Shown piece after piece: positions 28,361-46,162 of a stretch of 64,000 bases of DNA. Under the pieces are notes generated by a model. It searched no databases. It saw only the letters and a program-made list of their open reading frames with translations, and was not told the DNA's origin. The position numbers were made by a program, and so were the translations under genes. Location: the sequence record NC_048170.1; one strand, 5' to 3'. Within the stretch, counting starts at the first letter, position 1, and every line of letters starts with the position of its first letter.

Positions 28361-28834
28361 ATGCCAGTTTCATCCAAACCAAGAAAAAAATCCGTAGGAA
28401 ACCCTAAAGCTCAGGAAACAACAGCAATTCGTTGGGACGAGTTACGTGAACCTATCGAAAACTGCGAATTGTTATTGGGCACCCTGGGTGCGGCTATTTA
28501 CCAAGCGACGCAACCCTGTCGTTTACGATTAACCCAAAACAAACGTGATGAGTTCGTTGCGTTATCAACGAGCACGAATAAAGATCTGACCGAACTTCAA
28601 ACCGAGTTGACGACGATCAAGAACTCCATTACGCCGATGTATGGTAAAGAAGTCGATGAACAAAGTATTCTGTTACAGTACAACTACGGGATGTCGTTAA
28701 TGAACATCCTGGAACGCGCATCCGATATTCTGCGTCCTGACGTTGCACGCCTGAGCCAACTGCGTGTTGAAGGGATGGAGAACCAGATCCGATTCGCTAA
28801 CAGTGTTAAATCTCAAGGAGCCACCGAAGCATGA
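28361..28834 (+). CDS. Conserved hypothetical protein (coiled coil)
   Basis: 157 aa, AGGAG RBS, basic N-terminus. Confidence 0.65.
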   Translation: MPVSSKPRKKSVGNPKAQETTAIRWDELREPIENCELLLGTLGAAIYQATQPCRLRLTQNKRDEFVALSTSTNKDLTELQTELTTIKNSITPMYGKEVDEQSILLQYNYGMSLMNILERASDILRPDVARLSQLRVEGMENQIRFANSVKSQGATEA

Positions 28835-30495
28835 GCGAACAAGAAAAAGAAGTCGTGACGAATCAGGAAGCCACCGAACGTTCAGAGTCGTCCGTTGAAA
28901 CTACGATTCCGGCAAGTTCCGAGCCGGTTGGTTCCGCACAGCAGGAAAGTAAAGAAGATGTAGTGGCTCCAGAAGCAACCCGTGAAGAAGAACCATCACA
29001 TCCACCGCTAATCGATTTCTCGAAGGCGACGATACGTTTCCAATGCGAAGACATTCGTCCTAAGAGTCCGAAGAAAACAAAACGTCAGCCGTTGGTGTTA
29101 CCGCTGTATTCTCCGCGTGTACAGACAGCGTATTACCGGGAATACATCAACGAAGCAATGGATACCGTACAAGCCATTGTCGCTCAACGCGGTAAACCGA
29201 CAGACGAACAGTTTGATAAATTCAGTAAAGCGGTGGTGCAATCGGTTGCTGATGGACAATATCATCCGCGTGGTCCAGCTCACGATCGTGCGTTGGAACG
29301 TAAGGGCAGTCAGTGGACTAACGTGCCCGTAGACTCATCGGGTGTTGGTCGCGTTATTCCTGGCATCCCGCAACCGAACCATATTCCTGATGATGTCGAA
29401 GCGCCGCTGACAGGAACCGATGCGATCTATTTTGCCATCCGTAATACGAAATCAGGTGCGCCTGCGGTAATGCCGTTATGGCATAGCGGTATTAAGCTGC
29501 AGTTTAATCCGCCGTCAAATGAACGTGTCGCAATTATGCACGAACGTATTGCCCGCGATAAAATCCTGGGTGGACGTGATAGTACCGGTTTCCTGTTTTC
29601 GGCAACCTCGATTATCACCATGAAGCACGCAATCGAATTAGCATTAGAATGCTGCTACATGGCCAACGTACCTAACCTGGATATCCAGCGTTTGAAAGAC
29701 ATTATTCCGGTTACCGATGTTCCAGCGTTATTGTTGAACGTGCTGGTAACCATGTATCCGTACGGATATCCTTACGTACAGACCTGCTATCAGAATCCAG
29801 AAACCTGCGACTATCGTGTTGAAGATACCGTAAGCTTTGCGAAACTCTATCAAGTTGACAACAGCGCAATAACCAAACGTATGCGACAGATCATGACCGA
29901 AGGTCCGGTCATGACAGATGAACTTTTGCGTGAGTATGCAAACGAACTGGGTGAAACAAACTCCCGTACGTTGGATCTGTCCGACAACGGTTCTGTTATC
30001 ATTGAACTTGAAGTACCGAAGATTTCACGTCAGATCGCCATGGGCGAACGCTGGTTAAGCGATACCCTGGAAGATCTGCGTGATATTCTATCGCGTCCGT
30101 CAATGACCGAAGAAGAGCGTGATCGTGTTATTCGTGAACGTCAGTTCTATAGCTGGATGCGTCAGTATGATGCATGGATCAAATCCATGCACGTGTCAGT
30201 AAACGGCACCATGCGTCGTGTAAGCGATGCGGATACAGCAACGGTATTAGCGCAGCTGTCTCGTGATAGCGATCTTCGTGAACGCTATATCGATGGGTTG
30301 ATGCAATTCATCGGTGATTCGACGATTGCGCTCGCAGCGATGCCTGCCTGGAAATGTCCGAAATGTAATACCGATATTGCCGACAATCTGCGTGACCAGA
30401 AATACTACGATCTGATTGCTTTGGATGTACCCCAGCTTTTTTTTACCCTAAACTCCGTCCAATCTCTTCAGGAGGGGATGGACGCGGTATTCTAA
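28831..30495 (+). CDS. Putative tail/baseplate assembly chaperone (G-like product)
   Basis: 554 aa with two CxxC-like pairs (TCYQNPETC, KCPKC); ends shortly after a U8 slippery run. Confidence 0.5.
   Translation: MSEQEKEVVTNQEATERSESSVETTIPASSEPVGSAQQESKEDVVAPEATREEEPSHPPLIDFSKATIRFQCEDIRPKSPKKTKRQPLVLPLYSPRVQTAYYREYINEAMDTVQAIVAQRGKPTDEQFDKFSKAVVQSVADGQYHPRGPAHDRALERKGSQWTNVPVDSSGVGRVIPGIPQPNHIPDDVEAPLTGTDAIYFAIRNTKSGAPAVMPLWHSGIKLQFNPPSNERVAIMHERIARDKILGGRDSTGFLFSATSIITMKHAIELALECCYMANVPNLDIQRLKDIIPVTDVPALLLNVLVTMYPYGYPYVQTCYQNPETCDYRVEDTVSFAKLYQVDNSAITKRMRQIMTEGPVMTDELLREYANELGETNSRTLDLSDNGSVIIELEVPKISRQIAMGERWLSDTLEDLRDILSRPSMTEEERDRVIRERQFYSWMRQYDAWIKSMHVSVNGTMRRVSDADTATVLAQLSRDSDLRERYIDGLMQFIGDSTIALAAMPAWKCPKCNTDIADNLRDQKYYDLIALDVPQLFFTLNSVQSLQEGMDAVF
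30437..30484 (+). promoter_or_regulatory. Candidate programmed -1 ribosomal frameshift site
   Basis: In-frame T TTT TTT heptamer (30438-30444) plus a downstream stem CGTCCA/TGGACG. The -1 frame is open into the next ORF. Confidence 0.6.
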
Positions 30496-30917
30496 TCGAT
30501 CCGCGATACGGGTTACACGACGGGCAACTTGTTCGTAATGATGAAAAAATCTGGGAATTGCTGTTAGCGCGTAAAGGCGATGGTGGCATGAAGCTGAACA
30601 TCGAAATGGGTATTGCGTACGATACCATGTTTGGCTTGTACGATCGTGTTAACGACTGGACGCCGTTGAAATGGGTGGCTCAGCATCCCGCTGAAGATCC
30701 CTGGGACAGATTAGGGATTAAACCCTTAATCGAGGATTATGTCCGATTCGGTATTAAAGAGTTCATGACGCTGGATGCGTTTTTAAAAGCACCGTATCCT
30801 TACGCGCAAACGGTACTCAAAATCGCACAAGACGAACTGCGGAAACGTAGTGCGGTACTGGACGACGATGAGGACAAGTTACGACGAGAAGAAGAACGTT
30901 TACGAAACGGAAAATAA
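30444..30917 (+). CDS. GT-like C-terminal extension reached by -1 frameshift (track ORF 30558..30917)
   Basis: The frame is open from 30396 to 30917, with its first ATG only at 30588. Confidence 0.55.
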   Translation, partial: YPKLRPISSGGDGRGILIDPRYGLHDGQLVRNDEKIWELLLARKGDGGMKLNIEMGIAYDTMFGLYDRVNDWTPLKWVAQHPAEDPWDRLGIKPLIEDYVRFGIKEFMTLDAFLKAPYPYAQTVLKIAQDELRKRSAVLDDDEDKLRREEERLRNGK

Positions 30918-30918
30918 A

Positions 30919-31428
30919 ATGGCGAGATTTACCAGTTTGATTGGATTGGACATTTGGGAAACACCGGCTGACGTTCGGGTTATTCCTGTCAACACCGTCG
31001 GTGTGATGGGACGTGGTCTTGCCAAGCAGGCTGCCGAGCGCGTGCCCGGTCTTCTTGAAGCGTACCGCAAGCAATGTCGAGATGGGTTTACGGTGGGTGA
31101 AGTCGTGTCATATCAGCATGGCGAGAACGATCAGCTCACCTACGTGTTGTTTCCATCAAAATCGGATTGGCGTGAAAGAACACGACGCGAGTATATCGTT
31201 AACGGTTTACTGGCGTTAAAAGCATGGTTATTGGAGCTTCAGTTCGAAAGAGACGGCTTCTCATACCACCGTCCGGCTGAACCGTTGATTGTCGCAATTC
31301 CTCCGGTTGGTTCTGGTTGCGGTAATATCGGTTACGGACAATCCGAAACAATCCAGCCTCAGTGGGTACGCGCACAAATCAAACAGTATCTTGCCACCGT
31401 ACCGAACGTTCATTTCTACTTGTTCTAA
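30919..31428 (+). CDS. Macrodomain protein (Poa1p/TARG1/DarG-like ADP-ribosylhydrolase)
   Basis: DIWETPADVRVIPVNTVGVMGRGLAKQ and IAIPPVGSGCG-type loops. Start moved to ATG 30919. Confidence 0.8.
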   Translation: MARFTSLIGLDIWETPADVRVIPVNTVGVMGRGLAKQAAERVPGLLEAYRKQCRDGFTVGEVVSYQHGENDQLTYVLFPSKSDWRERTRREYIVNGLLALKAWLLELQFERDGFSYHRPAEPLIVAIPPVGSGCGNIGYGQSETIQPQWVRAQIKQYLATVPNVHFYLF

Positions 31429-46100: not shown

Positions 46101-46162
46101 AAAAAAAAAAACGAAAAAAAAAATAGGAAAACGGTGTTCATCCCTAAAAAGGATGAACACCG
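46101..46162 (-). terminator. Classical intrinsic terminator closing the accessory region
   Basis: 12-bp stem CGGTGTTCATCC/GGATGAACACCG followed on the minus strand by long T runs. Confidence 0.8.

What the first reader, a model, noticed from the sequence alone, without database searches (positions are those of the whole stretch)
28831..30917. Unannotated lambda G/GT-style -1 frameshift: U8 slippery site fusing a 554-aa protein to the next ORF
Seen: ...CAG CTT TTT TTT ACC... puts T TTT TTT exactly in X XXY YYZ register, 17 codons before the stop. The -1 frame (YPKLRPISSGGDGRGILIDPRYGLHDGQLVRNDEKIWELLLARKGDGGMKL...) is open without stops into ORF 30558..30917, which has no ATG until 30588. A 6-bp stem (CGTCCA 30456-61 / TGGACG 30479-84) with an inner hairpin starts about 11 nt downstream. 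Predicted products are 554 aa and about 695 aa. Known: long-tailed phages make tail assembly chaperones G and GT this way. Inference: this conserved phiKZ-like pair may be the giant-phage tail chaperone system.
Basis: partly seen in the sequence, partly recalled or inferred. Interest (0 to 1): 0.75.

Follow-up and report, generated by a model that had tools for sequence, protein, structure and literature searches.

The report
Conserved frameshift in jumbo-phage core gene
Near the end of a core gene of phage Goslar, ribosomes most likely slip back one base at a run of T's to make a second, longer protein; the signal is kept across phiKZ-like phages but annotated in none of the four records read.

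Summary
The window is Escherichia phage Goslar, GenBank bases 62001-126000. A T8 run puts T_TTT_TTT in the reading frame of gp081, 17 codons before its stop. The -1 frame is open from there to the end of annotated gp082.

Comparison shows this is a signal, not chance or a sequencing error:
- Of 64 distinct related loci (21-99% protein identity), 54 have T_TTT_TTY in register, 5 have G_TTT_TTY and 5 have T_TTT_N.
- The codon before the site encodes 11 different amino acids but ends in T in 59 of 64 loci (background 29%).
- The -1 frame stays open for 152-194 codons in every locus measured.
- In 54 of 63 loci there is no ATG, GTG or TTG upstream of the extension's first conserved block.
- None of the 150 best family representatives is an in-frame fusion.
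- The 93 nt before gp082's annotated ATG evolve as -1-frame coding sequence.

Most likely this is a programmed -1 ribosomal frameshift giving 554-aa and 695-aa products of chimallivirus core gene cg18 (phiKZ gp77).

The "lambda G/GT tail chaperone" reading is only partly supported. The logic is the same, but the protein is not a G/GT family member. A fold search gives a moderate lead to the T4 gp26/gp51 baseplate-hub assembly chaperones. No paper reporting the frameshift was found.

The parts
28361..28834 (+). gp080 (157 aa; phiKZ gp78 position). It is the first gene of the rightward operon, and its stop overlaps the gp081 start (ATGA).
   Evidence: synteny with phiKZ, Noxifer and LucasX
28831..30495 (+). 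gp081, the 0-frame product (554 aa, 62.6 kDa). It is chimallivirus core gene cg18 and the homologue of phiKZ gp77. It has a confident predicted fold and four conserved Cys.
30438..30444 (+). Slippery heptamer T_TTT_TTT in the 0-frame register, inside a T8 run at 30437-30444. This is a natural recoding signal, not a lesion.
   Evidence: conserved in register in 54 of 64 loci as T_TTT_TTY
30396..30917 (+). Open -1 reading frame (174 codons plus stop). It overlaps the last 100 nt of gp081 and has no ATG before 30588.
30444..30917 (+). The part of the -1 frame read after the slip: a 157-aa C-terminal extension (PHROG 12109). It starts with a variable linker, followed by a conserved, mostly helical domain that ends in a long charged helix.
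30588..30917 (+). gp082 as annotated in GenBank/RefSeq (109 aa). This is only the 3' two-thirds of the extension.
   Evidence: the coding signature extends upstream of its ATG
30454..30505 (+). Two adjacent predicted hairpins starting 9 nt after the heptamer (30454-30482 and 30483-30505). They are specific to the Goslar clade, and their role is unproven.
   Evidence: not conserved in the family and no covariation

Best explanation
gp081 and gp082 are one recoded gene. Most ribosomes translate gp081 in the 0 frame and stop after 554 aa. A minority slip back one base on the U_UUU_UUU heptamer. The two Phe-tRNAs re-pair perfectly in the -1 frame, and translation runs on to the gp082 stop. This gives a 695-aa protein with the same body plus a 157-aa, mostly helical C-terminal extension.

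The gene is not broken. It has no stops or disabling frameshifts, only one programmed frame change that is the conserved native state of the family.

Shown:
- the site, its register and its family-wide conservation;
- the -1 ORF is coding and has no start codon of its own;
- no in-frame fusions occur in nature.

Inferred:
- the shift is ribosomal;
- both products are needed in a set ratio, of the order of one long to ten short;
- the protein acts in virion or baseplate-hub assembly, with the extension supplying a second binding surface, as in other phage short/long chaperone pairs.
For: Site and its conservation:
- Among 64 distinct loci, 54 have T_TTT_TTY, 5 have G_TTT_TTY and 5 have T_TTT_N. 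All lie 10-39 codons before the 0-frame stop.
- The first Phe codon is TTT in 64 of 64 loci (background 45%).
- The preceding codon encodes 11 different amino acids but ends in T in 59 of 64 loci (background 29%). That position carries 1.62 bits, against 0.05-0.6 bits for the other third positions upstream of the site.
- The base three positions after the heptamer, a 0-frame third position that is the first base of the second -1-frame codon after the slip (mostly Pro), is 78% conserved. So the -1 frame is under selection from the site onward.

The -1 ORF:
- It is open for 152-194 codons after the site in all loci measured.
- Its first start codon lies anywhere from -310 to +368 nt of the 0-frame stop. 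Two loci have no ATG at all, and in L041 the -1 ORF opens exactly at the heptamer.
- 54 of 63 loci have no ATG, GTG or TTG upstream of the first conserved block of the extension, and 60 of 63 have no ATG.
- In the 93 nt between the gp081 stop and the gp082 ATG, changed codons (synonymous/non-synonymous, -1 frame) are 7/0, 4/0, 7/0, 8/3 and 11/3.

No fusions, no separate expression signals:
- The family ends where gp081 ends (PHROG 4585).
- None of the 150 best of 1221 representatives is a fusion.
- Goslar-like members listed are 552-567 aa (plus two partial calls of 84 and 93 aa), with separate 109-119 aa ORFs (plus one partial call of 92 aa); sequences of the two clusters were seen on hundreds of contigs.
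- No promoter-like or terminator-like site lies between the two ORFs.

Protein evidence:
- Published virion mass spectrometry detects gp081 (24 peptides) and gp082 (1 peptide), with an area/mass ratio of about 0.14 (doi 10.64898/2026.04.21.720040, Table S4).
Against: - No peptide crossing the site, and no peptide from the stretch upstream of the annotated Met, has been seen. The published search used the annotated proteome.
- There is no family-wide stimulatory RNA structure (mean z = +0.2) and no covariation in the Goslar clade.
- Ten of the 64 loci have weaker sites.
- The Phe-Phe pair is itself conserved in the 0-frame protein, so part of the T-run is explained by protein constraint.
- A T7-8 run could also support RNA polymerase slippage.
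- The functional assignment rests on a fold match to predicted, automatically named models plus sub-threshold Pfam hits.
Confidence: 0.8

Rival explanations
1. Transcriptional slippage. The phage or host RNA polymerase stutters on the T7-8 run, and a share of the mRNAs carry a different run length. Ordinary translation of those mRNAs yields the same long protein.
For: The run is T8 in Goslar and T7-8 in 38 of 64 loci. No conserved stimulatory structure is present. The T before the Phe-Phe pair also lengthens the run, so that conservation fits both models.
Against: 16 loci have T6 followed by C, 5 have T5-type G_TTT_TTY sites and 5 have only T_TTT_N. Those runs are too short for efficient polymerase slippage, yet all keep the ribosomal register.
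Confidence: 0.1
2. Two separate genes. gp082 is translated on its own, from the annotated ATG, from TTG 30558, or from a rare start such as ATT or ATC downstream of the AGGAGG at 30470-30475. The overlap with gp081 is incidental.
For: An AGGAGG lies 13 nt upstream of an in-frame ATT in Goslar. Records annotate separate genes with ATG, TTG or GTG starts. Three loci have an ATG early in the -1 ORF.
Against: No start codon is conserved in position. 54 of 63 loci have none upstream of the conserved block. The coding signature reaches upstream of every candidate start in the Goslar clade. The AGGAGG is clade-specific. This model does not explain the conserved third-position T or the heptamer register.
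Confidence: 0.06
3. Artefact or decay. The frame change is a homopolymer sequencing error in the Goslar record, or a recent disabling mutation of a gene that was originally single.
For: Homopolymers are error-prone, and only two phage database records hold this exact DNA.
Against: Independent assemblies from ENA, Logan, NCBI and IMG/VR show the same run and frames. Hundreds of contigs carry the split calls. Relatives down to 21% identity keep the same two-frame layout, and there is no fused homologue.
Confidence: 0.01

Closest known systems
Lambda G/GT, and the equivalent pairs such as P2 E/E+E': tail assembly chaperones made by a conserved -1 frameshift (Xu, Hendrix and Duda 2004, cited in PMC9024508; details from my own knowledge)
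   Same: A -1 slip on a heptamer near the 3' end of a phage morphogenesis-type gene. It gives a short major product and a long minor product that share the N-terminal body. The two-frame layout is kept across very distant relatives rather than being fused.
   Different: The gene is not between the tube and tape-measure genes. The protein is 554 aa, not about 140 aa. It has no sequence or fold membership in tail-assembly-chaperone families. It is detected in purified virions, whereas G and GT are absent from virions.
T4 gp26 and gp51, the hub assembly chaperones (Pfam PF12322; Leiman et al. 2010, PMC3004832)
   Same: The predicted fold of gp081 matches viral models named baseplate protein or T4-like baseplate hub assembly protein (E = 5e-5 to 3e-3, probability 1.0). 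PF12322 is the only family recurring in both Pfam scans. Both families carry conserved Cys pairs, including a C-P-x-C. T4 gene 26 also makes two products (26 and 26').
   Different: gp081 scores below the Pfam cutoff. The profile-profile alignment covers only the CxxC segment. A T4-family HMM hits the two halves in swapped order. gp081 is twice as long. T4 makes its second product by internal initiation, not by a frameshift.
E. coli dnaX tau/gamma -1 frameshift (my own knowledge)
   Same: A bacterial-type -1 slip on a homopolymeric heptamer that sets a fixed ratio of two forms of one protein.
   Different: In dnaX the shifted product is the shorter one. Strong stimulators flank that site (an upstream Shine-Dalgarno sequence and a downstream hairpin), and no such conserved stimulators are seen here.

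Membership tests
Programmed -1 ribosomal frameshift site (X_XXY_YYZ class) | Slippery heptamer in the register of the upstream frame | tested here: met
   T_TTT_TTT at 30438-30444 in the gp081 frame. In register in 54 of 64 loci as T_TTT_TTY, plus 5 G_TTT_TTY.
Programmed -1 ribosomal frameshift site (X_XXY_YYZ class) | Overlapping -1 ORF that is open from the site and lacks its own conserved start | tested here: met
   Open for 152-194 codons in all loci. 54 of 63 loci have no start codon upstream of the conserved block.
Programmed -1 ribosomal frameshift site (X_XXY_YYZ class) | Conservation of the site beyond what the encoded protein requires | tested here: met
   The third-position T before the Phe-Phe pair is present in 59 of 64 loci, although that codon encodes 11 different amino acids. 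The first Phe codon is TTT in 64 of 64.
Programmed -1 ribosomal frameshift site (X_XXY_YYZ class) | Stimulatory RNA structure 5-9 nt downstream | tested here: inconclusive
   Goslar has a hairpin after a 9-nt spacer (z = -2.4). The family mean z is +0.2, there is no covariation and no Rfam match.
Programmed -1 ribosomal frameshift site (X_XXY_YYZ class) | Trans-frame protein observed | not testable with these tools
   Published virion mass spectrometry lists gp081 and one gp082 peptide, but it was searched against annotated proteins only.
Lambda G/GT-type tail assembly chaperones | Gene pair located between the tail tube and tape-measure genes | tested here: not met
   The neighbours are virion RNA polymerase beta, the phiKZ gp79-like and gp78-like genes, and a macro-domain gene. 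The Goslar tube and sheath are gp217 and gp218.
Lambda G/GT-type tail assembly chaperones | Sequence or fold membership in tail-assembly-chaperone families | tested here: not met
   No Pfam, PHROG-function or NCBIfam hit. Foldseek hits to models named tail assembly chaperone appear only at E >= 0.75.
Lambda G/GT-type tail assembly chaperones | Short and long products from a -1 frameshift near the 3' end | tested here: met
   Predicted products of 554 aa and 695 aa. The layout is conserved.
Lambda G/GT-type tail assembly chaperones | Absent from the mature virion | tested here: inconclusive
   gp081 is estimated at about 22 copies and gp082 at about 3 copies per virion in purified Goslar. Non-structural enzymes are at similar levels in the same table.
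T4 gp26/gp51 hub assembly proteins (Pfam PF12322) | Pfam model scored above its gathering cutoff | tested here: not met
   No hit for gp081. 3 of 157 relatives score E = 0.0011-0.014, below the cutoff. T4 gp26 and gp51 themselves score E = 1e-52 to 1e-64.
T4 gp26/gp51 hub assembly proteins (Pfam PF12322) | Shared fold | tested here: inconclusive
   Foldseek against BFVD gives E = 5e-5 to 3e-3, probability 1.0 and TM about 0.5 on the target length, to models named baseplate or hub assembly protein. There is no solved structure to compare with. hhalign aligns only 13 columns.
Chimallivirus core gene cg18 | Listed orthologue of phiKZ gp77 and RAY gp267 in the core-genome table | tested here: met
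   The supplement of Prichard et al. 2023 lists cg18 as Goslar gp081, phiKZ gp077 and RAY gp267, 'hypothetical protein'. tblastn confirms PHIKZ077.

The most novel reading that the evidence does not exclude
The cg18 short/long pair is the so far unrecognised tail/baseplate-hub assembly chaperone of nucleus-forming jumbo phages. It would be an enlarged relative of T4 gp26/gp51 that uses the G/GT frameshift logic. That would tie the T4 hub chaperones and the frameshifted chaperones of other tailed phages into one functional class.
Probability: 0.25. Interest if true: 0.75.

Novelty: new member of a known kind. Interest (0 to 1): 0.62.

Why it matters
- It adds a protein of about 695 aa to the proteome of every phiKZ-like (Chimalliviridae) phage examined, including the model phages phiKZ and Goslar.
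- It corrects the downstream ORF in four named phages (phiKZ, Goslar, Noxifer, LucasX), where it is annotated as a separate small gene with an arbitrary start (ATG, TTG or GTG); in most of the 63 loci tested that ORF has no plausible start of its own.
- Core gene cg18 has no assigned function. A conserved short/long product pair, virion association and a fold lead to the T4 hub assembly chaperones give concrete, checkable hypotheses.
- It is a clean natural example of a U-rich -1 site that is kept without a conserved downstream structure.

Tried and rejected
Searches that gave nothing:
- Sequence searches of solved structures with profiles of both parts found nothing.
- Foldseek of the confident gp081 model against the PDB gave no match (best E = 0.9).
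- Pfam, NCBIfam and PHROG functional labels were empty for gp081, the extension and gp080.
- Rfam found nothing.

Inconclusive or unusable results:
- hhalign of the family against T4 gp51, T4 gp26 and a small T4-family alignment aligned only the CxxC segment.
- AlphaFold of the extension with a 6-sequence alignment was poor (pLDDT 52.7). No fold search was run on it, and one fold-search slot was left unused.
- A family-wide stimulatory hairpin was looked for and rejected. Goslar-clade covariation was looked for and not found.

Rejected readings:
- A sequencing error and a single fused gene were rejected.
- Reinitiation after the gp081 stop was rejected, because no start codon is conserved near the stop.

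Technical points:
- The first locus scan, with the close-relative alignment, returned only Goslar-like contigs.
- One Pfam call exceeded the size limit.
- One alignment reference had the wrong frame.

Full report
IDENTITY AND OBSERVATION

The window matches Escherichia phage vB_EcoM_Goslar at 100% identity (MK327938 / NC_048170; window position + 62000 = record position). The finding covers gp081 (28831-30495, 554 aa) and gp082 (annotated 30588-30917, 109 aa).

The sequence shows a T8 run at 30437-30444. The heptamer T_TTT_TTT (30438-30444) is in X_XXY_YYZ register of gp081, followed by 16 sense codons and the stop. The -1 frame is open from 30396 to 30917. Its first TTG is at 30558 and its first ATG at 30588. 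The minimum-energy fold uses a neighbouring register with a 9-nt spacer: -21.9 kcal/mol, z = -2.4. The predicted products are 554 aa and 695 aa.

IS IT MORE THAN CHANCE?

A T-run of this length is not remarkable in itself. The window has six runs of 7 or more, fewer than shuffles give. The comparative evidence decides the matter.

I collected these loci:
- Goslar-like contigs at 98, 88, 86, 55, 52 and 52% protein identity;
- phiKZ, Noxifer and LucasX;
- 60 IMG/VR loci at 21-31% identity.

Results across 64 loci with distinct junction DNA:
- 54 carry T_TTT_TTY in register, 5 carry G_TTT_TTY and 5 carry T_TTT_N. All lie 10-39 codons before the 0-frame stop.
- The first Phe codon is TTT in 64 of 64 loci, against 45% TTT among Phe codons of the same genes.
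- The codon before it encodes 11 different amino acids but ends in T in 59 of 64 loci, against 29% of codons in general.

Column by column, that third position carries 1.62 bits, while the other third positions upstream of the site carry 0.05-0.6 bits. The base three positions after the heptamer is a 0-frame third position and the first base of the second -1-frame codon after the slip (mostly Pro). It is 78% conserved. Selection therefore acts on the -1 frame from the site onward.

THE DOWNSTREAM ORF IS NOT AN INDEPENDENT GENE

- In every locus measured the -1 frame is open for 152-194 codons from the site.
- Its first ATG, GTG or TTG lies anywhere from 310 nt before to 368 nt after the 0-frame stop.
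- Two loci have no ATG in the whole ORF. In L041 the -1 ORF opens exactly at the heptamer.
- The extension family (PHROG 12109) has conserved blocks. In 54 of 63 loci no ATG, GTG or TTG lies upstream of the first block, and in 60 of 63 there is no ATG.
- Database records start the ORF at whatever codon is available: ATG giving 109 aa in Goslar, ATG giving 80 aa in phiKZ (PHIKZ076.4), TTG in Noxifer and GTG in LucasX. In Noxifer and LucasX the start lies inside conserved -1-frame sequence.
- In the Goslar clade, the 93 nt between the gp081 stop and the annotated gp082 ATG change almost only synonymously in the -1 frame (7/0, 4/0, 7/0, 8/3, 11/3). This matches annotated gp082 itself (31/4, 34/4).
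- No promoter-like or terminator-like site separates the two ORFs.

NOT AN ERROR, AND NEVER FUSED

The gp081 family ends where gp081 ends (PHROG 4585 profile). A search of 1.84 billion representatives found 1221 relatives. In the 150 best (apart from one 108-aa N-terminal fragment), the match to the C-terminal part of gp081 ends within about 10-15 residues of the protein's end, with a few matches stopping earlier. The longer proteins have N-terminal additions.

Full-length Goslar-like members listed are 552-567 aa, next to separate 109-119 aa ORFs; sequences of the two clusters were seen on hundreds of independent contigs. The gene is thus not broken. It has no stops and no disabling frameshifts, only one programmed frame change, which is the native state of the family.

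MECHANISM

The best explanation is a programmed -1 ribosomal frameshift, in which both Phe-tRNAs re-pair perfectly after the slip.

No conserved stimulator was found. Downstream folding energy is ordinary across the family (mean z = +0.2). Goslar itself is in the 4th percentile of its own gene. The Goslar-clade alignment shows no convincing covariation, and Rfam has no match.

The 17 nt after the heptamer are almost invariant between clades that share only about 52% protein identity. Dual coding can explain this, but an RNA-level role is not excluded.

Polymerase slippage on the T-run would give the same protein and cannot be excluded for the T7-8 sites. However, 26 of 64 loci have runs of only 4-6 T that still respect the ribosomal register.

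Published virion mass spectrometry of Goslar (doi 10.64898/2026.04.21.720040, Table S4) lists:
- gp081 with 24 peptides and 49% coverage, about 22 copies per virion;
- gp082 with one peptide, about 3 copies per virion.

The area/mass ratio is about 0.14. This is compatible with a minority long product. It is weak evidence, because it rests on one peptide, the annotated proteome served as the database, and non-structural enzymes appear at similar levels.

WHAT THE PROTEIN IS

gp081 is core gene cg18 of nucleus-forming phages (phiKZ gp77, RAY gp267), listed as hypothetical. It lies in a conserved block next to the virion RNA polymerase beta subunit and the phiKZ gp79-like gene, which are transcribed divergently.

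With 148 sequences, AlphaFold gives a confident model (pLDDT 85.5, pTM 0.84). Four Cys (319, 326, 509, 512) are conserved in at least 90% of the family. No solved structure resembles the model.

Against predicted viral structures, the model first finds its chimallivirus homologues. It then finds a graded series of shorter proteins, including models named 'Baseplate protein' and 'Baseplate hub assembly protein, bacteriophage T4-like' (E = 5e-5 to 3e-3, probability 1.0, TM about 0.5 on the target length).

T4 gp26 and gp51 both belong to Pfam PF12322. Leiman et al. 2010 (PMC3004832, Table 2) list both as hub assembly chaperones. PF12322 is the only family recurring in both Pfam scans. It scores E = 0.0011-0.014 in 3 of 157 members, all below the cutoff. 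Profile-profile alignment covers only the C-P-x-C segment. A T4-family HMM hits the two halves in swapped order with low scores. I rate this link as a lead of moderate strength.

The extension could not be modelled well (pLDDT 52.7). It looks helical, with a long charged C-terminal helix after a disordered linker.

This works like lambda G/GT: a short and a long product from a conserved -1 slip near the 3' end. But it is not a member of that family. The genomic position is wrong, the size is wrong, there is no family match, and the protein is detected in virions. The tail or baseplate chaperone idea survives only as the T4 gp26/gp51 lead.

NOVELTY

Eight full-text searches and several targeted look-ups found no report of this frameshift. 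The four named phage records I examined (Goslar, phiKZ, Noxifer, LucasX) annotate two separate genes. It is a new member of a known kind of recoding, in a core gene of an intensively studied phage family.

In my private reasoning I once spelled a short string spanning the two frames. All searches used each frame separately.

Noticed in passing
window 30850-31428 (gp083, macro domain): RefSeq starts gp083 at 30868, overlapping gp082 by 50 nt. Gene calls on relatives start it at the ATG at 30919, one base after the gp082 stop, and the N-terminus from that Met is conserved. The RefSeq start is probably 17 codons too far upstream.
   Followed up: partly
L008 (GCA_007261085.1 contig, 180 kb) and the clusters of P0001 and P0013: Goslar-like jumbo-phage genomes appear as 235-260 kb contigs in many isolate assemblies labelled E. 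coli (including O157), Salmonella enterica (Typhimurium, Anatum, Panama) and Shigella. This points to a carrier state or to carry-over in cultures.
   Followed up: no
window 46101-46123, - strand: Two long T runs (11 and 10 bases) lie side by side. Otherwise runs of 7 or more T/A are rare in the window: 6 runs, and 15 overlapping hits against 26.8 expected.
   Followed up: no
L012 and L013, 4662-5564: The same 49-kb contig assembled from two sequencing runs differs in gene calls at the end of the extension ORF and the start of the macro-domain gene (128 + 170 aa against 150 + 141 aa). This suggests an indel between the two assemblies.
   Followed up: no
L074 5803-7229 (phage T4 genes 26, 26' and 51): T4 gp26 and gp51, adjacent and divergently transcribed, are paralogues of one Pfam family (PF12322). 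Gene 26 is annotated with a second, shorter product, 26'.
   Followed up: partly
window 28831-28834: The gp080 stop and the gp081 start overlap (ATGA), which suggests translational coupling in the gp080-gp081 operon.
   Followed up: no
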